Virus record (IMG/VR): IMGVR_UViG_3300042386_001233
Location: 124,001-188,000 of that record
Reading direction: 5' to 3' (one strand)
Length of the DNA: 64,000 nt
Below the pieces are notes generated by a model. It worked only from the letters and a program-made list of their open reading frames with translations. It was not told the DNA's origin and made no database searches. Position numbers and translations under genes: made by a program. Positions within the stretch are counted from its first letter, which is position 1; the number at the start of each line of letters is the position of its first letter. Shown here piece by piece: positions 1,097-55,016 of the stretch.

Positions 1097-1513
1097 CTAT
1101 TTGGAGTTAAATACAGATCTTGGTCTGATTAGTGGGCCATTATCAATTAGTTTTTTCTCAAATTCGGTTTTTATAACATCATAATATGATAGAACATTAT
1201 CATAAAATAATTGCTCTTTATCATTATTCGTGTTTTTGATTTTATTACGAATTGTTGTCAATAATTTTGGTTCCATTAGATTATTAGTAACATAAATCAA
1301 CAATTCTGCAAATTTCTCTGCTTCTGTTGAAATTTCAACTAGAGATAATTTATCTAACTTTGGATGCAAAACTATGATATCAACCATGTCGTCTGGATGT
1401 AGAATTACACTTAGACTATGCATCTCCTCTGCTATAGACTCTTCTTGGGTTTTTTCTTTAGCCACAGAGGGCTGTTTTTTACTTAGCCAATAACGAAAGA
1501 GTTCTTGTAGCAT
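1097..1513 (-). CDS. hypothetical protein
   Basis: 138 aa ORF, colinear with neighbours. Confidence 0.55.
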   Translation of the reverse strand: MLQELFRYWLSKKQPSVAKEKTQEESIAEEMHSLSVILHPDDMVDIIVLHPKLDKLSLVEISTEAEKFAELLIYVTNNLMEPKLLTTIRNKIKNTNNDKEQLFYDNVLSYYDVIKTEFEKKLIDNGPLIRPRSVFNSK

Positions 1514-1904
1514 TTGGTGGTAGTATATCGGTGTTAAGATCTATGGTTCTAGTATAGCTATTTATTATAGTAGTTTCATAATTAACAAAACAAATATAAT
1601 ATATATCAAGCTGAGAAGTTATGATAATGTCAACTAATTTAGGATTTGTTCCAGAGGTTTCTTTTATACATCTATTCAACAGCATTGATAGAAGCTCATT
1701 AATGTCTTGATTAGGCTCTAGTTCAACAGAAGGCAGTCTTAGAGTATAATCAGCTAATGAGAGTATCTCATATCTGTTCTTGGAATGAATAAAAATTGGA
1801 ATAATAAGATTAAGCTGTGCATTTATCATAAGATCGAATAATATCCAGTGCTCTCTTAATGTTTTGCCTAATTGCTTCTCTAGAGACACCAAACTTTTTA
1901 CCAA
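1479..1904 (-). CDS. hypothetical protein (true start probably internal)
   Basis: ORF overlaps the sigma gene; an internal Met (MINAQL) is more plausible. Confidence 0.45.
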   Translation of the reverse strand: MVKSLVSLEKQLGKTLREHWILFDLMINAQLNLIIPIFIHSKNRYEILSLADYTLRLPSVELEPNQDINELLSMLLNRCIKETSGTNPKLVDIIITSQLDIYYICFVNYETTIINSYTRTIDLNTDILPPNATRTLSLLAK

Positions 1905-28305: not shown

Positions 28306-29307
28306 TTACAATACTTTCGCAGCTATTAAACATCCTTTTGACACTGAATGTAACGGATCGGCGGCATGCTTAACTTCTTTAATAGACAAAGGAAAATTAT
28401 TTTCTGATAGTTTTTTCTTAAAATGTTCAATATAACCACCAGCTTGTGATGTTCCACCAGCAATGACTATTGTTAGTGGGTCTTTAAACTTTGGTAAAGC
28501 TTTATGATCTGTTAGTGCTGCTGTTAATTGTTTAGTAGTATAATCTATTAAACGATCATAATATGACGATACAGCTGCTAATATAGGATTATCATTATGC
28601 TGACCAACATTAAAATTTCCACCCTCTTTCTCAGCCTGTACGACACTATCCGGTTCCCCTGTGGCTACGGCGCTCATTCTATCTACCCAATCCCCAGATT
28701 TAGTTGTGGAAAATACAACAGTGGGTTCACCATTTAGCATTACACAAACATTAGTCATACCAGCACCACAGCTAATAGCTATACCAGTATAATCATTATC
28801 CGCTAACTCAGCATAGCATAAAGCTTCAGCTTCATTAATTGATCTAGCGTTATATCCACAGCTATCTAAAATAGTTTTGACTACATCTTCATGATATCCA
28901 ACATCAAAATCTTCATCTTCTTGGTCTACTGGTTGAGCAGGAACACAAAAAACGATCTTTTCAAGGGGCTCCGAAGATTGCCCGACTACTTCCTTTAATA
29001 TAAAAGCTAAGACTCTTTTCGCATCTTTCTCTTTTGCAGAAACAACTCCTTTGTACATTGGTCTTTTAGCGGTGTCGTTTCTCTCAATAGCTTTTTCAAT
29101 AGCATCTTGTCCGAGGATAATAAAAGAACCGTCTGTATCTTTAATAAAGACTTTTCCAGCCAATCCCTTTTCTATCATCTTTGTTGCTACTGGAGTAGAT
29201 GGCTTGATGATATAAAAGGCATCTCTAAAGTCTTTGTATTGTACTTTATCTCCTTTGTCCTCAGATAAAACAATATAGCTTGTTCCTACGTCAAGACCCC
29301 TAGCCAT
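28306..29307 (-). CDS. actin-like ATPase (volactin/MreB-FtsA superfamily)
   Basis: Phosphate-1 GLDVGTS, connect INEAEA, phosphate-2 ISCGAGMTNV, GDWVD, adenosine IVIAGGTS, terminal P..SVSKG. Confidence 0.88.
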   Translation of the reverse strand: MARGLDVGTSYIVLSEDKGDKVQYKDFRDAFYIIKPSTPVATKMIEKGLAGKVFIKDTDGSFIILGQDAIEKAIERNDTAKRPMYKGVVSAKEKDAKRVLAFILKEVVGQSSEPLEKIVFCVPAQPVDQEDEDFDVGYHEDVVKTILDSCGYNARSINEAEALCYAELADNDYTGIAISCGAGMTNVCVMLNGEPTVVFSTTKSGDWVDRMSAVATGEPDSVVQAEKEGGNFNVGQHNDNPILAAVSSYYDRLIDYTTKQLTAALTDHKALPKFKDPLTIVIAGGTSQAGGYIEHFKKKLSENNFPLSIKEVKHAADPLHSVSKGCLIAAKVL

Positions 29308-34301: not shown

Positions 34302-35171
34302 TTAGAAATTATCCTCATCCTCTTCATCGTCAAAATCGTCCTCATAATCATCTTCGTCAGAATCGTCAAATTGAGACCAATAATCTTCATCGGTCAAGTG
34401 ATCATCATTATCTTCGTCATCATTATCATCATAGCTAAAATTTTCCGAATACAGAGGCTTAAGTAATTCTCCTGCATATTCAGCAACAACTTCATATCGA
34501 CAAGTACGAAGTTTTTCATAATTGCAATCACTTGGGACACTGACTACATCTTTCGGGTTAATCTTGACGATCACAATTCGATCTCCATTCTCAAGACTAC
34601 CATACCCAGCAACATAGTTTAAAGCCCCGGCATGAAGTCCATTTGAACAACCCCTACCTCTATCGTCATCAACTTTAGATCGTGTCATTTCGCAAACCTT
34701 ACCAACACTATTGTCGAAAACACCACGATACTTATCCTTAAAATCTGAACGAACAGCTTTATAGGCCAAAAAATATCCATCGGAAGTTACAGCCAAATTC
34801 TCATGTTCCAAGAAATCATACAGTTCCTTCTGACTCTGCATACTTGGATTTTCCATGAGATTATTCAGGAAATTAACAAGGGGCTGAAACGGCAATCCCT
34901 TGCTCATAAACTCCAGAATACGCTTACTAATACTACCATGAACTTCCTCACCCTCGTAGAGAACCTGACCGTTCTTGATCTCCACAAGACCATCGCTAAA
35001 AGTAGCAACAGCCTTTTGAACATCAACAACTTCCAAGAGTTCCTCTGCCGTAGCAGTAGGAAGTCTTTCCAGAATCAACTTATAGTTGATATGATCCGGC
35101 AACACCTGATAACTCTGGTTGTTAAGAACCAGCGTCAAATTACCATCCACAAACATAAACGGAACAGCCAT
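34302..35171 (-). CDS. rIIB: T4 rIIB-like protein
   Basis: DGYFLAYKAV..D, VDDDR..GCS.GLH, IVKINPKDVVSVP.D...KLRTCRYEVV; acidic tail. Confidence 0.85.
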   Translation of the reverse strand: MAVPFMFVDGNLTLVLNNQSYQVLPDHINYKLILERLPTATAEELLEVVDVQKAVATFSDGLVEIKNGQVLYEGEEVHGSISKRILEFMSKGLPFQPLVNFLNNLMENPSMQSQKELYDFLEHENLAVTSDGYFLAYKAVRSDFKDKYRGVFDNSVGKVCEMTRSKVDDDRGRGCSNGLHAGALNYVAGYGSLENGDRIVIVKINPKDVVSVPSDCNYEKLRTCRYEVVAEYAGELLKPLYSENFSYDDNDDEDNDDHLTDEDYWSQFDDSDEDDYEDDFDDEEDEDNF

Positions 35172-35217
35172 AATCCAAACTCCTAATACTTTTAGTTACG
35201 ATACCTGTGATACTGTC

Positions 35218-35256
35218 ATTTTACACTAATCGGCAAGCTTGTCAAGGGGTCTTGAG
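35218..35256 (-). promoter_or_regulatory. interlocked sigma70 + sigma28-like promoter (rIIB)
   Basis: TTGACA-N16-TAAAAT overlapped by CTCAAG-N16-GCCGATTA. Confidence 0.7.
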
Positions 35257-35266
35257 AAATTCCTGA

Positions 35267-37951
35267 CTACTTGATCAAACTACTCAACTGAATCTTAAAA
35301 AGGTCAATATTCTCCTGACTCATCTGCTCAATCCAATCCTTGCTAGACTTTCCATAATAGGAACTACGATCTTCAAGAATAGGATTCTGACTAGGCTTTA
35401 GGTCTGTCAGATTGCCGCTAACTTGATGAGTTCCCATCATATATTTCAGCATAGGATTCTTGTCTACTTCAGCCTTAATCTTCTCCCTAATTTCAGAGAT
35501 TTTCCATCTCTTAAGATCTTCAGTAGAAGTTCCACGAATAATCTTGAGATAACCCTCTGCCTTGTCTTGATTAGTCACAGAATACAAACGAGTGACAATC
35601 ATGTTTGTCAAGGTGTTATAGGCCAAATTAGCATTACGAATCTCTTTACTATCAACATCTTCAATCCCAGCCTCTTTCATAAGCTTAGAAATATGAGAAA
35701 GATATTCTGTTTGACTGAACTTAGTGATATTAAAAGGATGAATATGAACAGTATTAGCAAAGAACTCTGTTAGCATTGTTTTGTTCAAGCAATCAACAAG
35801 AGTCTTATTGCCAATAAACTTATCATAATCCAATCCAAAGATACTCAGAACATGAAACATAAACTGCTTATCGGTTGTTCCATACTGGCAATATCTATAG
35901 CCGCCAGTAGTCTTTTCTTCAGTTGCAAAATCTTTCTTGCAATATTCAACAAGCTTGTTGATAGAAGCAAGATTCTTAAAGTGCTTGTTAGCAACAACTT
36001 TAAGTTGACGCTTCAAGAAATCATTGAAGTTAACAAGATTATATCCGTCTTTCTCAAGCTTTTTAGCAAAAGCTGTTTTGATAGCATAAACCTTACTATC
36101 TCCAACCAAGTCCTTGACTATACTCTTGAGTTTATCATCACTAAGAGTAATAGCGATGTCATTAATCTCAGGATAACCAGACTCAGGCTCAGTCTTATAA
36201 CGAAGCATAGGAACATACACAATCTCATCCTGTTCCAGAAAATCCTCTAGTTGTTCTTCTGAAAGAATTCTGAGACAAGTAGCATCATTATAAGGATTAG
36301 TAATCTGCTTACTGTCCTTATCATAACCGTGGATAAAGAATACATCTTGATCACTAACACTACCATTAGAATTTCTATTGTAAGACTTTCTTGGGCCAGA
36401 ACTTTGTGTCAGATGTTTATAGTCTGAAACCTTGAGCAGATTTCCAGCCCCAACATCTTCGATCAGTTGATCAAAACCTTCTCCGCTTTTTGTATGATCC
36501 TTAGTGTCGATCATCAGATAAGCAAAGCAATCGTTTGCATTACAATATCTTGTAAGAATTTTCTTGGCACTTTCTTCACTAGCAACGTCGCAGACAAAGA
36601 AAGCCATCGTTCCCTTCTTTTTCTGATTATTCCAGTAATAGGAACCTTTACCAGTAAGAGTTTCATGATGGATTCTGTCTGTCAGAGCAACTTGGCGGCG
36701 AGAACGATAGCCAGCAGTCTTGTAATTAAAAACGTACAGACTCTTACCGGCAGGAATTTTATATTCCAAGTCATTGCCAGAGTTGATAGGATGATCTTTA
36801 CCCTTGGGATCAGTCCAAGTAGCACCAACACCCCAGCCGCCAGCCAATTCATTCATAGCATAGTATGAAGTAATTGCTTCTACCTTGTTTTGGGCAGCTT
36901 GAATTTTCTTGGAGAATTCTTCCTTCATCTCCATGTAAATTTCTTGAGTCTTTTTACGCAGTGTCTTGATAACATCTTTAGTATACTGCAAACCTTCACG
37001 GCTAACATCCATTTCCAGTTCACCGATACCAAAATCAAGCTCAAGATAAAGGCCGGAGTTCAGAATCTCTCCAACGAAACTCTTCCAAGAATCAATATCT
37101 GCTTTCTGGAAAGCCCTATTCCACTTCTGAATATGATCGGGCATCTCATCCTTCTCTTGACCAACAATCTGTGCGGTCTGAACAGGATAAGCGATATTGC
37201 CCATGATAGCTACGATACCACTATCAATTCGATGATAACCATTAGGGAAATAACTATTATCATTATTAAGTCGGCATACCCTCCAACCTTCACCACTAAT
37301 GATGATGTTGGTATTACTATACTTATGATCTTGCAGATTATTTCCGATACCACCTTCAAGGATGGGTTTCATGCGGAAATAGTGGAAGATTCTCTTAGCC
37401 TTGTCGGTAAACTCTTGGAAATCATGCTGCTTAACAGCGAAACTAATTTCAAGACCATTAGGCTCAGACGTATCTGAAGTATTGAAAAGATTCAGAGTAG
37501 GCACTCCGCTCTCGTCAATCGCAGCAATATAGGTATACTTCTTACCGTTGTAATATGATGCCGTGGTGAAACTCTTGGTATACGCGAAGGGACTCTTAGA
37601 CCCTAGACCAAGACAACCAACAAAATCATTACTATCATTCTTGTTGGACGCACCATAAGTTGTATACAAGTCCTCCATATCGGCCTGACTAAGACCAGTG
37701 CCATAATCTCTGACTACGAAGGTAGGATTGGCAGCGGTAGGCAAAGTCACCTTAAAGGGATTCTTATTCCCGGCAGAGATATGACTATCATAAGCATTAG
37801 TAGAAAGCTCACGAATCGCAGCCATAACCTTATCAGAGTAAAGAGAGTCTGAAAGGATTTTAAACATTTTGCTCGTCTGAGCAATATTGAACTGATTCCT
37901 GCTTGCAACTCCAACGCTGTGAGTCTCAATCGTCCTATCTGCCAACTTCAT
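35267..37951 (-). CDS. rIIA: T4 rIIA-like protein (GHKL ATPase N-terminus)
   Basis: FKILSDSLYSDK.AAIRELSTNAYDSH, RDYGTGLS, YGASNK, GCLGLGSKSPFAYT, SREGLQY; directly upstream of rIIB. Confidence 0.88.
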   Translation of the reverse strand: MKLADRTIETHSVGVASRNQFNIAQTSKMFKILSDSLYSDKVMAAIRELSTNAYDSHISAGNKNPFKVTLPTAANPTFVVRDYGTGLSQADMEDLYTTYGASNKNDSNDFVGCLGLGSKSPFAYTKSFTTASYYNGKKYTYIAAIDESGVPTLNLFNTSDTSEPNGLEISFAVKQHDFQEFTDKAKRIFHYFRMKPILEGGIGNNLQDHKYSNTNIIISGEGWRVCRLNNDNSYFPNGYHRIDSGIVAIMGNIAYPVQTAQIVGQEKDEMPDHIQKWNRAFQKADIDSWKSFVGEILNSGLYLELDFGIGELEMDVSREGLQYTKDVIKTLRKKTQEIYMEMKEEFSKKIQAAQNKVEAITSYYAMNELAGGWGVGATWTDPKGKDHPINSGNDLEYKIPAGKSLYVFNYKTAGYRSRRQVALTDRIHHETLTGKGSYYWNNQKKKGTMAFFVCDVASEESAKKILTRYCNANDCFAYLMIDTKDHTKSGEGFDQLIEDVGAGNLLKVSDYKHLTQSSGPRKSYNRNSNGSVSDQDVFFIHGYDKDSKQITNPYNDATCLRILSEEQLEDFLEQDEIVYVPMLRYKTEPESGYPEINDIAITLSDDKLKSIVKDLVGDSKVYAIKTAFAKKLEKDGYNLVNFNDFLKRQLKVVANKHFKNLASINKLVEYCKKDFATEEKTTGGYRYCQYGTTDKQFMFHVLSIFGLDYDKFIGNKTLVDCLNKTMLTEFFANTVHIHPFNITKFSQTEYLSHISKLMKEAGIEDVDSKEIRNANLAYNTLTNMIVTRLYSVTNQDKAEGYLKIIRGTSTEDLKRWKISEIREKIKAEVDKNPMLKYMMGTHQVSGNLTDLKPSQNPILEDRSSYYGKSSKDWIEQMSQENIDLFKIQLSSLIK

Positions 37952-39463: not shown

Positions 39464-40824
39464 CAGTTATATTATATAGAAAAGCTTTTGCCTTATCTAT
39501 AGAATGAAACTCTCCAAGAAAAACAGTTCCCGGTAGACCATCACTATCAACTGGTACTGATCCATATATTTGATAAAAGGGGTCATCATAAGCATCCTTT
39601 TCTTTTTCTAAAAATTCCGCAGATGTTCTGATTTCATCTATATAAGTACCTCCCTCATAATCACTATATTCTCTTACAGTAACCAGTAAAAAATATTCTA
39701 TGGGAGATTTGGGATTATTATTCTTAATCCTACCATTACAAAGAGTATTACCCATCATTTTTCCTATAAAGAGGAATTACAGTATTTTGATCAACATAAG
39801 GGTTGTTTTGAGTTCTTAAATCAAACAAATCACCACGACCATTAATTCTGGCCCAAGCAACAGGCTTATCAAGAGAATCTTTTAAAGACTGCATCTGCTG
39901 AGACACTTCCAAGTATTCGTTTGTCTGTTCAACAGCAAATTCATTAGCTCTATAGACTTCTTCAGCCCATTCTTTATTTTTCTCTTTTAGTTTTTTCAAT
40001 TCATCTTTGGCATTTTGCACAAAGAAAAGATCAGCCCCAGAAGCCCAAGCAAAATCAATAATACTCTCAAGAGGATTAGCGTGTTTTTCCATATAAGTTG
40101 CTAGTTCTATAAATGTCCTTCTTATTCCATCTTCCCAATTTTCATATTCTTCGATCATTCTTTAGCTGTTCTATTTCTCTTTCCAATTTAGCTACTCTTT
40201 CGTATATATCATGGTTAGCTAAACGAGGCAGGTCTTTTGCTGGTGTTTTGCCATCTCCAATTCTTGTATCCCACAACTCAGCAATGCTATCATACTGGTA
40301 TAAGAAGAGTTCGCCAAGTCTTGGAATAACATCACAACCATTCTTGGCTTTTGGTAGACTAAAAGATCCGTTCATTCTAAGACAGTAATTTCTGCTCCCT
40401 TAAATTCAGGCTTATAGAAGCCTGTCAAACTGTCCTTCTGATAAGTATCTTCAACGATGAATCTAATATCATACTTATTCTCCATTATGGAAACTTCTGA
40501 ACTAGTAGAAATCTTTTTGTTCTCAACAATATATTGAATAATTGCTATCTTAATTTCTTCTTTAGTTAGATTGTATAGATTATATGTCATAAATTAAAAG
40601 TCATCTCCCATTCGATATTCATCAAACTTTTCTTGACATTCTTCATTAGCATCATAATATCCAACATCATAACCTTGTTCATGGCCCATAGCATACGCTG
40701 CCATCAACCATTTGATTATATCGTCAGTCTTTCCTTTTGCAACACAATTTCTTATGTCGCTTATAGCTCTTTCGTGTCTGACGCTATATCCTTCAACTTC
40801 ATTTATCCAGTGGTCGAATGTCAT
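39435..40824 (-). CDS. cluster of five small hypothetical proteins
   Basis: ORFs 39435-39758, 39748-40158, 40142-40375, 40372-40590 and 40594-40824 overlap or abut. Confidence 0.5.
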
Positions 40825-40853: not shown

Positions 40854-41128
40854 TAGGAGCGGTGAGAATCGAACTCACACTGGATGGATTTTCTTGCCAC
40901 TATAGTTTTCACTACCATTTCTGTTTGTGGTCTGGACTTTATCTTAACCATAACTTTCGTTTTAGGTTCCTGCCGTCAAGTCTCTACACCTTCATAATAT
41001 TTCTATTAAGCTTGGCTCGGTATTAGCAGTTAAGCCTCCACCGAATTTGACAGGTTCTACATCAAAGATTTCTCTTTAAGCACTCAAATTGTATAAGTCC
41101 ATTGTCTCTGCCGTTGGACTACGCTCCC
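40854..41128 (-). tRNA. trnL: tRNA-Leu(UAA) interrupted by a group I intron
   Basis: Exon1 GGGAGCGUAGUCCAACGGCAGAGACAAUGGACUU (41128-41095) + exon2 AAAAUCCAUCCAGUGUGAGUUCGAUUCUCACCGCUCCUA (40892-40854); spliced loop CUUAAAA. Confidence 0.9.
40893..41094 (-). mobile_element. self-splicing group I intron (tRNA-Leu UAA type), 202 nt, no ORF
   Basis: Inserted after U34; IGS GAGU pairs with ACUU; P AAAUUCGGUG, Q AAUACCGAGCCAA, R GUGUAGAGACUUGACGG, S AAGAUAAAGUCC; terminal G. Confidence 0.9.
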
Positions 41129-41133
41129 GTATA

Positions 41134-41215
41134 CTTCCAAGCTACATATCATAACGATTGGTTAGATGTTTGTCTATGTGTCTCTACCAATATTTATGAG
41201 GGATGTAGTTGGAAG
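41134..41215. other. long interrupted inverted repeat / hairpin just upstream of tRNA-Leu
   Basis: CTTCCAA/TTGGAAG, CTACAT/ATGTAG, TCATAA/TTATGA, ATTGGT/ACCAAT nested pairs. Confidence 0.65.
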
Positions 41216-41235
41216 CATTTGGTTTACACTAAGAC

Positions 41236-41520
41236 TCAGCCGTTAGAATGAGCAGCCTTTAGACGGCGAACAGTCTCAGCCATAGCCTCGACATTATCCA
41301 CAGTCTTTGTGGGCTTTGCTCGCTCCATCGCTGGCAGTTCAATGCCCTTCTTAGCCAGAGCGGCCTTTGTACGAGCATAACGAGCCATCGTACTAGCAAC
41401 CTTCTGACCAGTCTTACTGGCAATCTCAGCATAGGTCTTGCTGGAAAAAACTGCCTCAAGGAACTGGTCATCACTGCAACGAACACGACTCTGCTTCTCA
41501 GTAGTAGTAACTTCAGCCAT
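41236..41520 (-). CDS. small basic HTH-like DNA-binding protein
   Basis: SKTYAEIASKTGQKVASTMAR; GGAGG SD; own promoter. Confidence 0.6.
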   Translation of the reverse strand: MAEVTTTEKQSRVRCSDDQFLEAVFSSKTYAEIASKTGQKVASTMARYARTKAALAKKGIELPAMERAKPTKTVDNVEAMAETVRRLKAAHSNG

Positions 41521-41577
41521 AATCAACCTCCAAATTCTTAACCAATCTACAACCAAGGCTCAGTCAAGCGACTGATC

Positions 41578-42198
41578 TTACCTTGCGTTGTTCCTTCGAT
41601 TGTACAACATAGTATCGTCACTGTCAATGGGCGACCTTGAAATTTTTTTCGTTCTCGCCAGAAATTGCTGTTGAACGTCTTTAAAGCTCCAAGGAGTACC
41701 AAACTCCACCCCATCTCTTTTATTATCGACCCCTACATCAAGAGTGAGCGTTCCAGAAGCAACGTCCTCACGATGCAGTCTGCCATGAACATGACCATAA
41801 AGCATCCAACTTTTCCTATAGCTACCAGACCAACTTCTCATAGGATAATGACACATAAATATCTTTTGATTAACATACAGAATCATTTTCTGATCAGACA
41901 CACTAGAAAATCCACTAGTAAACTTAGTTGGTTCATCATGATTACCAAGAATAATGTGAACATTCTCACAAACTATTCTTTCTCTATATGAGAGAGCAGT
42001 TCCACCCTTATGACAGAAATCTCCTATAATATAAAGAATATCGTTTTGTCCAACTGTTTCGTTTATAGAAGAAATAATTTTAGCGTCCATCTCTCCACCA
42101 GTAGAAAATGGACGATTACAATATCCTATAATATTCCTATGTCCCAGGTGAAGATCAGCAGTAAAAAATACTTTCTGACCATCAACTATCTTATCCAT
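41578..42198 (-). CDS. calcineurin-like metallophosphoesterase
   Basis: TADLHLGH, GDF, GNHD, CHYP, YGHVH, DVGVD. Confidence 0.9.
   Translation of the reverse strand: MDKIVDGQKVFFTADLHLGHRNIIGYCNRPFSTGGEMDAKIISSINETVGQNDILYIIGDFCHKGGTALSYRERIVCENVHIILGNHDEPTKFTSGFSSVSDQKMILYVNQKIFMCHYPMRSWSGSYRKSWMLYGHVHGRLHREDVASGTLTLDVGVDNKRDGVEFGTPWSFKDVQQQFLARTKKISRSPIDSDDTMLYNRRNNAR
41599..41641 (-). promoter_or_regulatory. interlocked sigma70 + sigma28-like promoter
   Basis: TTGACA-N17-TACAAT with TTCAAG-N16-GACGATAC. Confidence 0.75.
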
Positions 42199-42202
42199 TA
42201 AA

Positions 42203-42484: not shown

Positions 42485-43558
42485 TCATGATGTTTCCTTT
42501 GGTGAGTATAGAGTAACCTTAATTATTATATACCCATCCCGCCCACTGTCAATATTCTGTATTGATGATATTCTTCCTTTACCCAAGAATGAATCACCAA
42601 CTAACAAGAATGGCCCGCCGTCTAAGTTAGCAGAAGTTATTATTGAGATATCTGATTGACATCCAAATTTCGCCCAATCGCTTTCTCCCTCAACCAAATA
42701 TTCATATTCCCCAATTTGTGTTATTATTCTTTTGTTTTTGTTCTTAGACTGTAAGCACTGGCTCATTAAAAGCCTCACTATCGAGTATATAACCTTGATT
42801 ATTTTCTGACGTTAGGTTAGCAAGAACGTCTTTTAGTCTTTGATTTTCTTTCTCAAGGGTATTCATTATTTTTTCAGCTTGATTTAAAGCTTTCTGAAGA
42901 GATTTAACTCTATTAGCTAATTGATCGTTCATATATTCTGTTGCTGTTCTGACAACCATGATTAGCCTCCTTGATATGAGTTTGACAACCTTATATTATA
43001 CACCTTACAGGTTAAGTCCATTTAAGAATTTTTGTAAATCTTTGAGTTGTTTTTTGTCTAACACCATCTGATCAGCATAGGGCTTTTTATATGCTAAAAC
43101 TTGAAAACAGTACCTTAGTCTCTGCCATAATGACATCTTATTACTATAGTTTGTATAATGCTCAAATATAGCCAAATCTGCCAACTCAATTTCATGGTCA
43201 TATTCTATTACCAATATCTCACTCTTACAAGAACACGGAATGAATAGTGTCTTATTTTCTTTTAGATTGGTTACGCTTCCCATGTTTCTTCTTTCTAAAA
43301 ATTCTTTCGTAGTTTTTGTCCCAAGTATCTTGAGAAACTAGACTGACTCTTCTTTTAGACCCTTTACCATTTTGGCTCATCATTTTCTCCTACATACAAA
43401 AATTCGTTCTCTTTTACAATATATAGTGTTGATGAATCCCCATAAATTTCATACAAATAAGAACCATCTCCTTGAGGCATGTCTTTATTCAGATAACCAT
43501 ACTCTATTATCTCATTATCTCTCATAATAGCAACTCTAGGAAATCTCATTGGACTCAT
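42485..43558 (-). CDS. cluster of small hypothetical proteins
   Basis: ORFs 42485-42778, 42744-42959, 43005-43283 and 43364-43558, plus a short MSQNGKGSKRR ORF starting at about 43382. Confidence 0.5.
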
Positions 43559-44253
43559 GATTCTAGTACATAACTCCAGTAGCGACTATCTTCTTTCTTT
43601 TGAAGATCATCCCAATAGATCGACCTTGCTACATAGGATGGGACTTTCAATTTACCACAGTTAACCATCCAATGCCGCTCCATCTTCTTATAGATTTGTG
43701 AACCAATCTTGCTCTTATTATACTTCAGAGCCTCAACATCGTAAAGCCTCAGTTGATGAATATCTCCGCAGAGTACCCTAGCCTCATTAGGATGAATCAT
43801 CTCAAGAGCAAAGCTAATCTTAGCCAGACCAATTCCGCTAATCTTATTGAGGATACTATCACGTTTCTTAACATGATACTTCTTTGTGGTCAGATAAAAA
43901 TCTTTAGGATTAGCCCAAAACTTGGTGCTAAAATCCCAGATATAAGCGGTGCGATTATTGTGCAACCCAACACCACTCTTGTGGAGTTTTGTCAAAAGAA
44001 TTTCTTTACTATCTACCCATTCGCTAAAATTCTTGATAGCATTGTATCCCTTGACATTACCCTGCCAAGTGGTATGCACTGAACAATAGGCAAAGAGATA
44101 GCGACGGAAAATATCTTCGTCAGTCTTGGGGCGAACACTCTCCCAATAGTCTTTATAGGCAACTACCTTATCCTTCGGAAAATTCTTGAAAAACTCATCG
44201 GCCTTGCTGGTACTCATAACAATCGGCTTTTTCTCAACAACAATCTCTGTCAT
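43555..44253 (-). CDS. HhH DNA glycosylase-like protein (8-oxoguanine glycosylase type)
   Basis: HhH motif ISGIGLAKISF followed by LCGDIHQLR (DxH). Confidence 0.6.
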   Translation of the reverse strand: MTEIVVEKKPIVMSTSKADEFFKNFPKDKVVAYKDYWESVRPKTDEDIFRRYLFAYCSVHTTWQGNVKGYNAIKNFSEWVDSKEILLTKLHKSGVGLHNNRTAYIWDFSTKFWANPKDFYLTTKKYHVKKRDSILNKISGIGLAKISFALEMIHPNEARVLCGDIHQLRLYDVEALKYNKSKIGSQIYKKMERHWMVNCGKLKVPSYVARSIYWDDLQKKEDSRYWSYVLES

Positions 44254-44290
44254 AATGTCCTCAAAGGTTGGTTCCAAAGTGTATGCTCAC

Positions 44291-48345: not shown

Positions 48346-48354
48346 AATATTAAG

Positions 48355-48707
48355 TGGACGATTGGGGAATCGAACCCCGTCCAGTATAAACGTCTATATA
48401 AACTTCTACATTGTTAGTTACTTGTTATCACACAAATAACAAAGCTATCAGAATTATCTGAGTCAGATTGAGTACAATCATCATTCCTATTTATGTCTGG
48501 TAGGACTACCATATCCGAATATCGGAGTCAGCATGATTTGGTAATAAGGCTCATGCCGCCCCACTCATTACCTAATTAATTAGGCAGCGAGAGCGAGAGT
48601 TGAAACTTCGCCAATTAACATTTTTAATCGACTTTTATACTGGCCGGTCGATCAACCAGTCAATGCAATTTATATTTCTTTTTACCTGTCGATACCAGGA
48701 ATCGCCC
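48355..48707 (-). ncRNA. ssrA: tmRNA; tag peptide (A)GEVSTLALAA* at 48612-48580
   Basis: 5' GGGCGAUUCCUGGUAUCGAC and 3' GGACGGGGUUCGAUUCCCCAAUCGUCCA; G3.U70, A73; PK1-like region; UUAAUU before resume codon GGC; tag ends LAA-UAA. Confidence 0.93.
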
Positions 48708-48891: not shown

Positions 48892-48912
48892 CAGAATCCT
48901 TCCTGTTTAAAG

Positions 48913-48988
48913 TAGGGCGAGTTGGAGTCGAACCAACCTATGAACACCTTATAAGAGTGTCGGATGCAACCGGCTTACCTTCCGCCCC
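48913..48988 (-). tRNA. trnI: tRNA-Ile(UAU)
   Basis: GGGGCGG/UCGCCCU acceptor, anticodon arm ACACU-CUUAUAA-GGUGU, T-arm GUUGG-UUCGACU-CCAAC, A73. Confidence 0.85.
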
Positions 48989-53407: not shown

Positions 53408-54319
53408 TTAAGAAACACAGTTTAGTAACGAATCATATTTTGCAAGAGCCAAGTCTTTTGCTTTTAGTTCTAGATCAATATCAAACTCAAGACCATAATT
53501 ATCAAAAGTATTTTCTGGATAATCTGCGTGCGCTCTTGGATTATTTCCTTCTCTACTTTCACTATAATGAAAAAGCGGTCTAGTTTGCCAAGTATCCCAA
53601 CACATATTAATAGCCTCACGTTCTGTAAGACCATTTGGGTGGCACTTATGATGTAAATAGTCGAAACATATTGGAATACGAGTAATCGGATGGAAGATAT
53701 CTACTAATTCTTTCACACTCCAGCAGTTAAGTTTGTCATCGTTTTCGATTGTGATGCGAGCCTGACAGTTATTGTCCAGTTTCTTAAAGTTGTTGTAGAA
53801 CCTGTGAGCAATTTCTTCTCTGGTTCCATTATTATTATGAATATGGAAATTCATTGGAGATCTACGATCTGCTGGAAGTCCAATTCTGTCAAAGAAACTG
53901 CTGTAGAAATTGAGTTCTGTAATGGTTTTTTCGATAACTTTTTCGTTGAGACTAGCCAGACTGTTAAATTCACTTGGATGAGCAGAAACACGAACGCTAG
54001 TAGAGGAAATAGTTTCTGAAAGATTGTCAAACGCATCTTGTATTTCGTCATAATTAGGCAAATCTTCAAGACTCACATTAGCCTCATCGTAAGTAATAAG
54101 AGGAAAAATGTCGCTACTAACACGATAAACATAATTGTTTTCTGCACAAAATTGAATTGTTTTATTGGTTACTTCTAGATTGTTTTTGATTCTATCACCA
54201 AGAATCTCTAGTGCTTCTTCTCGCGGCAAAGAACTGAATCGTTTAAAGGTCATAGTCTGATGACCAAATCCCTGTTCTTTCAACTTGAGGGATATGCAGC
54301 AAAGTCCAAGTTTATTCAT
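53408..54319 (-). CDS. uvsE: UV damage endonuclease UvsE/UVDE
   Basis: LGLCCIS, YRVSSDIFP, RVSAHP, IENDD, IPICFDYLHH, PLFHYSE, RAHADY, LELKAKDLA; start moved to MNKLGL. Confidence 0.92.
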   Translation of the reverse strand: MNKLGLCCISLKLKEQGFGHQTMTFKRFSSLPREEALEILGDRIKNNLEVTNKTIQFCAENNYVYRVSSDIFPLITYDEANVSLEDLPNYDEIQDAFDNLSETISSTSVRVSAHPSEFNSLASLNEKVIEKTITELNFYSSFFDRIGLPADRRSPMNFHIHNNNGTREEIAHRFYNNFKKLDNNCQARITIENDDKLNCWSVKELVDIFHPITRIPICFDYLHHKCHPNGLTEREAINMCWDTWQTRPLFHYSESREGNNPRAHADYPENTFDNYGLEFDIDLELKAKDLALAKYDSLLNCVS

Positions 54320-54337
54320 AGTGTCTCCTGTGCCGGA

Positions 54338-54378
54338 ATTATATCCTAGTATCGTCAAGTTGTCAAGCCAGACTTGAG
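54338..54378 (-). promoter_or_regulatory. interlocked sigma70 + sigma28-like promoter (uvsE)
   Basis: TTGACA-N17-TATAAT with CTCAAG-N16-GACGATAC. Confidence 0.8.
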
Positions 54379-54380
54379 AA

Positions 54381-55016
54381 TTATTCGTATTCAACCAGCA
54401 ATGCTTGTCGAATAGGATCAGTAAGATTATGACGATCTAGATAAAAAGATAGATCGGGATTAAAAGTATTAGGCATATGTTCTAATACTCTTTGTGAGTA
54501 TATTGGACGTTTTGGTCGTAGTCTTAATTCTCTATTGAGATGATAACTCCATAAATACGCATTAGTTGCTCGTATATATTTATCTGTGTCAAAATCTTCG
54601 ATAGGACAATTTTTGACCAGTTTTAAAACTCTTTTTTCACAATCATGTTCTATCTCTAAAATATCGTGTAGACTTTTGTCTAGTTCTTCTGTAGTGACTT
54701 TGTAGTCTTTAATAAAAGCACTAGCAACCAAAGAAGGATAACTAATCCAATCAAAAAGAATATCATATGTTTCCATACTTCTATCCCACAATTTACGATC
54801 AGTTTTCCATTGAAGGAAATGACAGTATTCATGAATAAGTATTTCAAAACCCATGTGATGCTTCATGGCTACCGCGAATTCTTTTTCATTATCCTCTATA
54901 GAACACCATCCACCACAAGCTCCCTCTAATTCTTCTTGATTGTATAGCAAAACAGAGAATCCATGATCAAGCAATTCTCTAACTATTTTAATTGTTAAAT
55001 TAGATTTAGTTTCCAT
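54381..55016 (-). CDS. putative zincin metallopeptidase
   Basis: ILIHEYCHFLQ (HExxH) plus downstream EHDCE. Confidence 0.6.
   Translation of the reverse strand: METKSNLTIKIVRELLDHGFSVLLYNQEELEGACGGWCSIEDNEKEFAVAMKHHMGFEILIHEYCHFLQWKTDRKLWDRSMETYDILFDWISYPSLVASAFIKDYKVTTEELDKSLHDILEIEHDCEKRVLKLVKNCPIEDFDTDKYIRATNAYLWSYHLNRELRLRPKRPIYSQRVLEHMPNTFNPDLSFYLDRHNLTDPIRQALLVEYE

What the first reader, a model, noticed from the sequence alone, without database searches (positions are those of the whole stretch)
40854..41128. Phage tRNA-Leu(UAA) split by a compact group I intron
Seen: a 202-nt ORF-less intron at the U^AA position with P/Q/R/S elements like the cyanobacterial/plastid trnL intron. Known: phage group I introns are mostly described in protein genes. 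Inference: the phage acts as a vector for this tRNA intron, and splicing could time UUA decoding.
Basis: partly seen in the sequence, partly recalled or inferred. Interest (0 to 1): 0.6.

Follow-up and report, generated by a model that had tools for sequence, protein, structure and literature searches.

The report
Self-splicing intron in phage leucine tRNA
A freshwater phage carries a leucine tRNA gene (anticodon UAA) split by a 202-base group I intron at the same spot as the classic bacterial and chloroplast tRNA-Leu intron; related phages hold the same gene with and without it, so it is a real and probably mobile member of a known kind, not a new mechanism.

Summary
On the minus strand, 41128-40854 is a tRNA(UAA) gene with exons 41128-41095 and 40892-40854. 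An ORF-less 202-nt group I intron, 41094-40893, lies between U34 and A35 (Rfam RF00028 56.9 bits, E 8e-12; ARAGORN -i). A P1-P9 model is 96% paired over 29 homologues, with 31 of 55 pairs compensatory. Syntenic relatives carry the same tRNA without the intron, which fixes both junctions. No RNA data exist, so splicing is inferred.

- The intron is not in the cyanobacterial trnL clade. It sits in a phage-only clade.
- The core motif hit at least 119 viral contigs, 79 of them inside split tRNA genes (Leu, Arg, Lys, Thr and others). Agrobacterium phage Atu_ph07 holds an unannotated copy.
- The tRNA is 73 nt with a short variable loop ("type I"). Its D-arm motif occurs in viral tRNAs only with leucine anticodons, all six. 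Cultured cyanophages carry it, annotated tRNA-Leu.

Intron presence and tRNA type are scattered among near-identical flanks, and the intron is better conserved than its exons. Longer relatives encode HNH endonucleases. This fits a selfish mobile element. Nothing supports "timing of UUA decoding". Verdict: a new member of a known kind.

The parts
41095..41128 (-). tRNA-Leu(UAA) 5' exon, nt 1-34. It holds the acceptor 5' strand, U8, a 3-bp D stem with loop CAACGGCAGA, the anticodon-stem 5' strand, and C32 U33 U34.
   Evidence: ARAGORN -i; cloverleaf pair counts over 10 distinct family members; intron-less alleles.
40893..41094 (-). Group I intron, 202 nt, with no ORF on its strand. The 5' splice site follows U 41095. 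The terminal G (omega G) is 40893.
   Evidence: RF00028 at 56.9 bits, E 8.4e-12; structure counts on alignment A1; its exact absence in syntenic L269.
40854..40892 (-). tRNA-Leu(UAA) 3' exon, nt 35-73. It holds A35 A36 A37 A38, the anticodon-stem 3' strand, a 5-nt variable loop CCAGU, the T arm, the acceptor 3' strand and discriminator A73. CCA is not encoded; CUU follows.
41082..41098 (-). P1: exon ACUU plus intron A (41098-41094) pairs with the internal guide UGAGU (41086-41082). The U.G wobble at the splice site is 41095 with 41085.
   Evidence: Rfam alignment. The U.G pair is present in 28 of 29 aligned homologues (columns 12/30).
41062..41079 (-). P2 hairpin, 7 bp with a GAAA loop.
   Evidence: All 7 pairs show compensatory change (helix 3). 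The helix is also recovered by the MFE fold.
40935..41054 (-). Catalytic core. P3 is 41054-41049 with 40974-40969. P4 is 41045-41041 with 41020-41016. P5 is 41036-41034 with 41027-41025. P6 is 41010-40993. P7 (pseudoknot, G-binding helix) is 40982-40979 with 40938-40935. P8 is 40968-40946.
   Evidence: P3 has 4 of 6 pairs compensatory and is 100% paired; P5 3 of 3; P6 5 of 6; P8 5 of 8. P4 and P7 are nearly invariant. The 21-nt J6/7-P7-P3' motif is shared with bacterial tRNA introns.
40896..40931 (-). 3' domain. A closing helix (40931-40927 with 40900-40896) encloses two small GAAA hairpins (40923-40916 and 40914-40903), followed by AAG and the 3' splice site.
   Evidence: helices 10-12. The C-G to U-A switch in the closing helix occurs in 11 of 29 sequences. 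All 4 pairs of the last hairpin covary.
41148..41176 (-). Promoter-like site (TAGACA, 17 nt, TATGAT) ending 20 nt upstream of tRNA nt 1. This is weak evidence only.
   Evidence: 10 of 12 matches. Six such sites were found in the 1.1 kb scanned, against 3.0 expected.

Best explanation
The locus is a functional phage tRNA-Leu(UAA) gene interrupted between U34 and A35 by a self-splicing, ORF-less group I intron of the bacterial tRNA type (IC3-like).

Proposed mechanism:
- The gene is transcribed on the minus strand together with, or just downstream of, the neighbouring early-type genes.
- The intron folds. P1 presents the U.G pair at 41095/41085.
- Free guanosine attacks after U34, and the terminal G 40893 then directs exon ligation.
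- The product is a 73-nt tRNA with anticodon loop CUUAAAA.
- Host enzymes trim the ends and add CCA.
- Host LeuRS charges it, and it reads UUA/UUG. UUA is the commonest leucine codon of this 34%-GC phage.

The intron itself is most likely a selfish element that spreads among related phages. Spread would occur by recombination or by homing with an endonuclease supplied in trans. It probably does not act as a regulator.

Shown here: the intron family, its structure, the junctions, the intron-plus and intron-minus polymorphism, and the leucine-type tRNA body. Inferred: splicing itself, charging with leucine, and the mode of mobility.
For: - Rfam RF00028 scores above its gathering score.
- On 29 homologues, 96.4% of cells pair and 31 of 55 pairs are compensatory. 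None of 500 shuffles reach these values, and slid controls pair at 42% or less.
- The U before the 5' splice site and the terminal G are conserved.
- Syntenic relatives L269, L314, L248, L298, L261 and L322 carry the same tRNA without the intron. In L269 the BLAST alignment joins window 40892 to 41094/41095.
- The intron-less homologue in L084 scores 57.5 bits on the Rfam tRNA model.
- The tRNA cloverleaf keeps pairing through compensatory changes at 6-67, 7-66, 10-25, 11-24, 28-42, 50-64 and 52-62.
- The D-arm motif was found in at least 107 viral tRNAs, and apart from two mis-placed intron calls every one carries a leucine anticodon: UAA, CAA, UAG, GAG, AAG or CAG.
- A73, U8-A14, A15-U48 and G18G19 are invariant. 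These are the E. coli LeuRS identity set, which does not need the long arm (PMC9976931).
- Cultured phages carry the short form annotated as tRNA-Leu, for example P-SSM7.
- UUA makes up 28% of Leu codons.
- For mobility: window versus L040 gives 201/202 identical in the intron but 64/73 in the exons. Window versus the long-arm L010 gives 91% in the intron and 67% in the exons.
- On a flank tree, intron presence needs 4 changes and tRNA type 7 changes.
- A related intron at the same site in L061 encodes an HNH endonuclease.
Against: - There are no RNA data. All 24 public runs that hold the phage are DNA, so splicing and expression are unobserved.
- The host is unknown.
- E. coli LeuRS did not charge the natural short-loop tRNA-Leu(CAA) of Streptomyces coelicolor (PMC6614811). 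Charging of a short-loop tRNA-Leu therefore depends on the host enzyme.
- High intron conservation could reflect constraint on the ribozyme rather than recent transfer.
Intron-less long-arm alleles could not be sampled.
- No endonuclease gene lies in or next to this intron. The nearest HNH gene is about 35 kb away.
Confidence: 0.82

Rival explanations
1. Regulatory intron: splicing efficiency limits or delays the supply of the UUA decoder and so times translation of UUA-rich phage genes.
For: UUA is the top Leu codon. A single UUA-reading tRNA acts as a developmental regulator in Streptomyces (bldA, discussed in PMC6614811). The intron is very well conserved.
Against: Close relatives with near-identical flanks do without the intron, so it is dispensable. 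The host presumably supplies its own UUR-reading tRNA. There are no expression data. The same intron family sits in many unrelated phage tRNAs, which fits a parasite better than a tuned switch.
Confidence: 0.06
2. The intron gives a competitive benefit at the DNA level. It disrupts the target site of a homing endonuclease that cuts intron-less tRNA-Leu(UAA) genes. Intron-plus phages would then be immune and convert co-infecting relatives (marker exclusion).
For: Intron-plus and intron-minus alleles are interleaved on the flank tree. The intron is more conserved than either exons or flanks. Related introns at the same site carry HNH ORFs (L061, 25.2 bits against a cut-off of 21.4). A free-standing HNH gene exists in the contig.
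Against: No endonuclease has been linked to this site. The HNH gene in the contig is distant and of unknown specificity. This is a variant of the best explanation rather than a true alternative.
Confidence: 0.1
3. Decaying gene: the intron can no longer splice and the tRNA gene is a relic.
For: Splicing has not been observed. P1 is short at 5 bp.
Against: The core is intact and covarying. The splice-site U.G pair and terminal G are kept. The intron is 99.5% identical between phages whose flanks differ by about 10%. The exons keep a perfect cloverleaf.
Confidence: 0.04
4. A different junction or identity: the mature tRNA has another anticodon (for example GAA, as ARAGORN called for some relatives) or accepts an amino acid other than leucine.
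For: ARAGORN labels six related genes Phe(gaa). The tRNA lacks the long variable arm typical of bacterial tRNA-Leu.
Against: A GAA junction needs a non-G residue at the intron's 3' end. Placing the junction by the U/terminal-G rule gives CUU|AAAA in all of them. Intron-less alleles read CTTAAAA. The D-arm type co-occurs only with leucine anticodons of both codon boxes.
Confidence: 0.03

Closest known systems
Group I intron of cyanobacterial and plastid tRNA-Leu(UAA) ('Leu.3Ug' in Williams 2020, bioRxiv 10.1101/2020.01.27.920355)
   Same: The insertion site is identical (CUU/a...g/AAAA, between U34 and A35). The ends are U and G, the architecture is the same, and the 21-nt core motif is shared. 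Both are ORF-less and compact.
   Different: In the tree, the cyanobacterial introns (37 of the 43 bacterial Leu(UAA) rows) form their own clade, and the window's intron lies elsewhere. The host genome is a phage. The host tRNA is a short-loop form. The window's intron is shorter: 202 nt against 219-441 nt in the sampled cyanobacteria.
Group I introns of other bacterial tRNA genes (Arg CCU, Ile2/fMet CAU; non-cyanobacterial Leu UAA of Phaeodactylibacter, a Rhodospirillaceae MAG and Gammaproteobacteria MAGs)
   Same: They share the core motif and fold, and they form the sister and neighbouring clades of the phage introns. Alignment with L143, L165 and L180 supports the same helices.
   Different: These are cellular genomes (some MAG contigs could be phage-derived; not checked). 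All their tRNA-Leu bodies have long arms, at 83-89 nt.
Introns in tRNA genes of Lak megaphages (Devoto et al., bioRxiv 10.1101/356790)
   Same: They are introns inside phage tRNA genes, highly conserved between genomes, and present or absent between variants.
   Different: They were reported as 'enigmatic' and not classified. They sit in other tRNAs (Phe, Gly, Thr, Tyr) of gut megaphages. I did not compare them with this family.
Unannotated homologues in deposited phage genomes: Agrobacterium phage Atu_ph07 (MF403008, about 112.9-113.2 kb) and the 735-kb uncultured phage LR756501
   Same: They are 77-78% identical to the window's intron. They are also inside tRNA-Leu(UAA) at the same site.
   Different: Their tRNA bodies have long arms (84 and 86 nt), and the Atu_ph07 intron is 278 nt. 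The records annotate no tRNA or intron there. Rfam RF00028 does not detect them even at E 0.001.
Small ORF-less group I introns of about 200 nt in phage protein genes (Jug phages, PMC12880540; crAss-like phages)
   Same: Their size and phage setting are similar. Weaker core similarity was seen to a Pelagibacter phage capsid-gene intron and to a crAss-like phage region next to a GIY-YIG gene.
   Different: They interrupt coding sequence, not a tRNA anticodon loop.
Short-variable-loop ('type I') tRNA-Leu: S. coelicolor tRNA-Leu(CAA) (PMC6614811) and the 73-nt tRNA-Leu(UAA) of cyanophage P-SSM7
   Same: These are tRNA-Leu without the long arm. P-SSM7's tRNA is 83.6% identical over 73 nt to the intron-less allele L269 and is annotated as reading UUA.
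   Different: They have no intron. Leucylation has been shown only for the Streptomyces tRNA with its own LeuRS.

Membership tests
Group I intron (Rfam RF00028) | Covariance-model score at or above the curated gathering score | tested here: met
   56.9 bits against 50, full model 1-253, E 8.4e-12; the same hit in the whole contig.
Group I intron (Rfam RF00028) | The 5' splice site follows a U that forms a U.G wobble in P1 with the internal guide | tested here: met
   U 41095 pairs with G 41085. The U.G pair is present in 28 of 29 homologues.
Group I intron (Rfam RF00028) | Terminal G (omega G) before the 3' splice site | tested here: met
   G 40893 is invariant in alignment A1 (G210 of the first sequence).
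Group I intron (Rfam RF00028) | Conserved P3-P8 core with the P3/P7 pseudoknot, supported by covariation | tested here: met
   96.4% of cells are paired and 31 of 55 pairs are compensatory; 0 of 500 shuffles reach these values and slid controls pair at 42% or less. P7 and P4 are nearly invariant, so covariation says nothing either way for those two helices.
Group I intron (Rfam RF00028) | Guanosine-dependent self-splicing | not testable with these tools
   No RNA run holds the phage. This needs an in vitro assay.
tRNA-Leu(UAA) anticodon-loop intron ('Leu.3Ug') | Insertion between U34 and A35, giving the loop CUUAAAA | tested here: met
   ARAGORN -i; the U/terminal-G rule; natural intron-less alleles at the syntenic locus.
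Cyanobacterial/plastid trnL intron lineage | Groups with the cyanobacterial trnL introns in a phylogeny | tested here: not met
   The cyanobacterial introns form a separate clade (support 93/92). The window's intron lies in a viral-only set of 24-25 rows (supports 92/78 and 82/58) within a mainly viral clade of 49 rows (93/89). The bootstrap had not settled, and sampling was by an exact motif.
Bacterial-type tRNA-Leu | Leucine anticodon plus the E. coli LeuRS identity set (A73, U8-A14, A15-U48, G18G19) | tested here: met
   All are invariant in 10 distinct family members. The identity set is taken from PMC9976931.
Bacterial-type tRNA-Leu | Long variable arm (class II / type II shape) | tested here: not met
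   The variable loop is 5 nt (CCAGU) and the tRNA is 73 nt. The same D-arm type occurs in at least 107 viral tRNAs of 73-76 nt, all with Leu anticodons. It is filed as a short-loop tRNA-Leu.
Bacterial-type tRNA-Leu | Charged with leucine by LeuRS | not testable with these tools
   The host is unknown. E. coli LeuRS failed on a natural short-loop tRNA-Leu whereas the Streptomyces enzyme succeeded (PMC6614811).
Mobile (homing) group I intron | Intron-encoded homing endonuclease | tested here: not met
   There is no ORF on the intron strand of the 202-nt intron. Longer relatives L061 and L073 do carry HNH-like ORFs.
Mobile (homing) group I intron | Patchy presence among close relatives, and an intron phylogeny that disagrees with its host gene | tested here: met
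   Intron presence needs 4 changes on the flank tree. In the intron tree, short-arm and long-arm host tRNAs are interleaved, for example L010 with L042 at 100/84. The intron is 99.5% identical where the exons are 87.7%.

The most novel reading that the evidence does not exclude
The window samples a freshwater phage lineage in which the tRNA-Leu(UAA) locus is a swappable cassette. Short-loop or long-arm tRNA bodies, each with or without the same intron, are exchanged between genomes whose flanks are nearly identical. The most novel reading is that this turnover is driven by conflict rather than drift. Armless leucine tRNAs could escape host defence nucleases that cut the variable region of long-arm tRNAs. 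Anticodon-loop introns could mark or protect tRNA genes in endonuclease warfare between co-infecting phages. Group I introns in phage tRNA genes would then be a widespread, largely undescribed layer of phage tRNA biology.
Probability: 0.12. Interest if true: 0.7.

Novelty: new member of a known kind. Interest (0 to 1): 0.48.

Why it matters
A 2014 review stated that every phage intron then known was in a protein gene, even though phages encode many tRNAs (PMC3984707). The only later report I found is the unclassified introns of Lak megaphage tRNAs.

This locus, and the quick census it prompted, show that classical tRNA-type group I introns are common in phage tRNA genes. A cultured jumbo phage carries one that is unannotated. 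Standard tools miss these genes: ARAGORN without the intron option finds nothing, and Rfam's model fails on some homologues. Phage tRNA repertoires, and arguments from codon use or suppressor tRNAs that rest on them, are therefore likely under-counted.

The natural intron-plus and intron-minus pairs give a ready system for studying tRNA-intron mobility. So do the short-arm and long-arm tRNA-Leu alleles at one locus. The compact 202-nt ribozyme has many natural variants and may interest RNA engineers.

Tried and rejected
- RNA evidence: the one run search returned 24 holders, all DNA lake metagenomes. Laying four of them gave contigs only. They showed no spliced or intron-less joint at this locus. 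They did show assembly breaks at 40897-40926, where the intron's 3' part is shared with other tRNA contexts. This says nothing about splicing.
- Rfam on relatives: at gathering score it found nothing in L002-L005. At E 0.001 or better it still missed the Atu_ph07 and LR756501 homologues. Absence of an RF00028 hit is therefore weak evidence.
- GAA (Phe) junction: considered and rejected.
- Assembly chimera: considered and rejected.
- Neighbouring ORFs (76 aa at 40594-40824, 106 aa at 41236-41556, and others) have no endonuclease or other informative family hit. The exception is a phosphoesterase at 41578-42198.
- MAFFT placed the 202-nt gap wrongly in alignment A2. The intron-less reading rests on the sequences themselves and on the BLAST joins.
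- Exons were handled separately or by reference, and natural intron-less alleles took the place of the spliced model.
- Tools not used, because the finding is an RNA feature: the large protein searches, structure prediction and complex prediction.
The library lacks most subscription journals, so this is not proof of absence.

Full report
**1. What is there**

Read on the minus strand, 41128-40854 is a tRNA gene in two pieces.
Without that option it finds only the tRNA-Ile at 48912-48988.
- The exons are 41128-41095 (34 nt) and 40892-40854 (39 nt). The intron is 41094-40893.
- Rfam's group I intron model matches 41104-40911 on the minus strand end to end, at 56.9 bits (gathering score 50) and E 8.4e-12. 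It is the only such match in the 90,490-bp viral contig that holds the window.
- The 5' exon ends in U 41095, which pairs with G 41085 in P1. The intron ends in G 40893.
- The intron strand has no ORF.
- CCA is not encoded.

**2. Is it real**

The evidence comes from independent assemblies, covariation and natural intron-less alleles.
- Three IMG/VR contigs from other metagenomes are 100% identical to the window over 5-6 kb.
- 24 public lake-water DNA runs hold the stretch. One 78.7-kb contig spans it.
- I aligned 29 homologous introns with 8 nt of exon on each side (alignment A1) and wrote a P1-P9 model with the P3/P7 pseudoknot.
- On that model 96.4% of cells pair and 31 of 55 pairs show compensatory change. 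None of 500 shuffles reach the observed values, and sliding the partners drops pairing to 24-42%.
- P4 and P7 are almost invariant, so covariation is silent on them. A plain MFE fold recovers P2, P3, P4/P5, P8 and the 3' hairpins (z = -2.4).
- The strongest test of the junctions is natural. Syntenic relatives L269, L314, L248, L298, L261 and L322 carry the same tRNA uninterrupted.
- L269's tRNA matches the window's two exons at 70 of 73 positions. BLAST joins window 40892 directly to 41094/41095.
- An intron-less homologue in L084 scores 57.5 bits on Rfam's tRNA model.
- I did not build or search a joined exon sequence. These natural alleles served instead.

**3. Where the intron belongs**

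- A 21-nt core motif from the intron hit at least 119 viral contigs and at least 120 bacterial contigs.
- In bacteria, 113 of 120 hits lie in split tRNA genes of the classical kinds: Leu UAA (mostly cyanobacteria), CAU tRNAs and Arg CCU. This matches Williams' survey (bioRxiv 10.1101/2020.01.27.920355).
- In viral contigs, 79 of 119 lie in split tRNA genes. These are Leu(UAA), Arg(UCU), Arg(CCG), Lys(UUU), Thr(UGU), Ser, Pro and suppressor-like tRNAs. Several ARAGORN boundaries there are clearly wrong.
- The deposited genomes of Agrobacterium phage Atu_ph07 and the 735-kb phage LR756501 hold a homologue in tRNA-Leu(UAA). It is unannotated and invisible to RF00028.
- In a maximum-likelihood tree of 131 introns, the cyanobacterial trnL introns form their own clade. 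The window's intron lies in a viral-only group of Leu(UAA) introns. Non-cyanobacterial bacterial trnL introns are in the neighbouring clade.
- Supports are moderate, and sampling was by an exact motif.

**4. The tRNA**

- The mature product is 73 nt with a 5-nt variable loop. This is unlike the 83-89-nt tRNA-Leu of every sampled bacterium.
- Ten distinct family members keep the cloverleaf through compensatory changes in all four stems. G1.U72, A73, U8-A14 and A15-U48 are invariant.
- Six genes that ARAGORN labelled Phe(gaa), and one labelled Lys, become CUU|AAAA once the U/terminal-G rule is applied.
- A scan with the D-arm motif alone returned at least 107 viral tRNAs of 73-76 nt. Their anticodons are UAA, CAA, UAG, GAG, AAG and CAG. 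Apart from two mis-placed intron calls, no anticodon outside the two leucine boxes appeared. This is good evidence that the body specifies leucine.
- Cultured phages carry it annotated as tRNA-Leu, for example P-SSM7, next to tRNA-Ile(AUA) and tRNA-Arg(AGA).
- Published work shows that E. coli LeuRS needs A73, A15-U48, G18G19 and A20a, and not the long arm (PMC9976931).
- The same enzyme did not charge the natural short-loop tRNA-Leu(CAA) of Streptomyces, which its own LeuRS does charge (PMC6614811). Charging here is therefore likely but depends on the host.
- UUA is the phage's commonest Leu codon at 28%. AUA makes up 38% of Ile codons. This fits the two phage tRNAs.

**5. The phage and the locus**

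- The contig has 34% GC and encodes rIIA/rIIB, a clamp loader, an ATP-dependent DNA ligase, UvdE and glycosyltransferases.
- It has no close cultured relative. It comes from lake water.
- The region upstream of the tRNA (41236-42200) is syntenic in about 40 fetched viral loci.
- On a tree of that flank, tRNA type (short loop or long arm) needs 7 changes and intron presence needs 4. Some near-identical flanks carry different cassettes, for example L081 against L105 and L022 against L085.
- The intron is better conserved than what surrounds it. Window against L040 gives 201/202 in the intron, 64/73 in the exons and about 90% in the flanks. Window against long-arm L010 gives 91%, 67% and 74%.
- A longer relative inserted at the same site encodes an HNH endonuclease (L061), and L073 has a weaker HNH-like ORF.

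**6. Interpretation**

- The best account is a functional tRNA-Leu(UAA) gene carrying a self-splicing, selfish group I intron. The intron moves or is exchanged among related phages.
- Splicing, charging and the mechanism of spread are inferred. No RNA data exist.
It is made less likely by relatives that lack the intron.
- The kind of element is known. The same site and fold occur in bacteria and plastids, and introns in phage tRNAs were noted for Lak phages (bioRxiv 10.1101/356790).
- What is new is the setting: a compact tRNA-type group I intron in a short-loop phage tRNA-Leu. It appears to belong to a large, little-described population of such introns in phage tRNA genes.

Noticed in passing
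window 48352-48707 (-): Phage-encoded tmRNA (Rfam RF00023, 77.4 bits), which ARAGORN did not call. The in-frame tag reads ...GEVSTLALAA followed by a stop. A syntenic relative, L010, has one at 118.6 bits.
   Followed up: partly
window 48912-48988 (-): tRNA-Ile with anticodon UAU, which reads AUA. AUA makes up 38% of Ile codons in the window's ORFs. The set Ile(UAU) plus Leu(UAA), with or without Arg(UCU), recurs in L289 and in cyanophage P-SSM7.
   Followed up: partly
viral loci L247-L362 (for example L269:2538-2610, L347:5096-5168, L253, L249): [quoted passage not shown] Members carry all six leucine anticodons. I found no paper describing this family in phages.
   Followed up: partly
viral loci L006-L124: The same intron family splits many other phage tRNA genes: Arg(UCU) at two different loop positions, Arg(CCG), Lys(UUU), Thr(UGU), Ser(UGA), Pro(UGG), and tRNAs with UCA or CUA anticodons that would read stop codons. 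ARAGORN's splice boundaries are often off by 1-4 nt.
   Followed up: partly
L061:868-1365 (-) and L073:6215-6679 (-): Long (666-687 nt) relatives of the intron, at the same CUU|AAAA site of phage tRNA-Leu(UAA) genes, contain ORFs with HNH endonuclease signatures. L061 scores above the Pfam cut-off and lies on the tRNA strand. L073 scores below the cut-off and is antisense.
   Followed up: partly
L081 against L105, and L022 against L085 (flank homologous to window 41200-41700): Nearly identical flanking sequence lies next to different tRNA-Leu(UAA) bodies (long arm against short loop). This implies cassette exchange at the locus.
   Followed up: partly
window 40897-40926: In three of four lake metagenome assemblies the contigs break inside the intron's 3' part. 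Loose ends lead into other tRNA 3' halves, so many related intron copies coexist in the same lakes and fragment the assemblies.
   Followed up: no
window 28306-29307 (-): A 333-aa protein matches Pfam Volactin (PF25216) end to end (E 5.7e-66), with a weak MreB match. This is an actin-like protein in a phage.
   Followed up: no
L003 (MF403008 111432-114710), tRNA at 1459-1820 (-): The Agrobacterium phage Atu_ph07 record annotates a 117-nt 'hypothetical protein' CDS that overlaps one end of an unannotated, intron-split tRNA-Leu(UAA) gene.
   Followed up: partly
window 34302-37951 (-), 53408-54394 (-), 43555-44277 (-): rIIA and rIIB homologues, a UvdE UV endonuclease and an Ogg-type glycosylase. 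This is a DNA-repair-rich early region of a large lytic phage with no close cultured relative.
   Followed up: no
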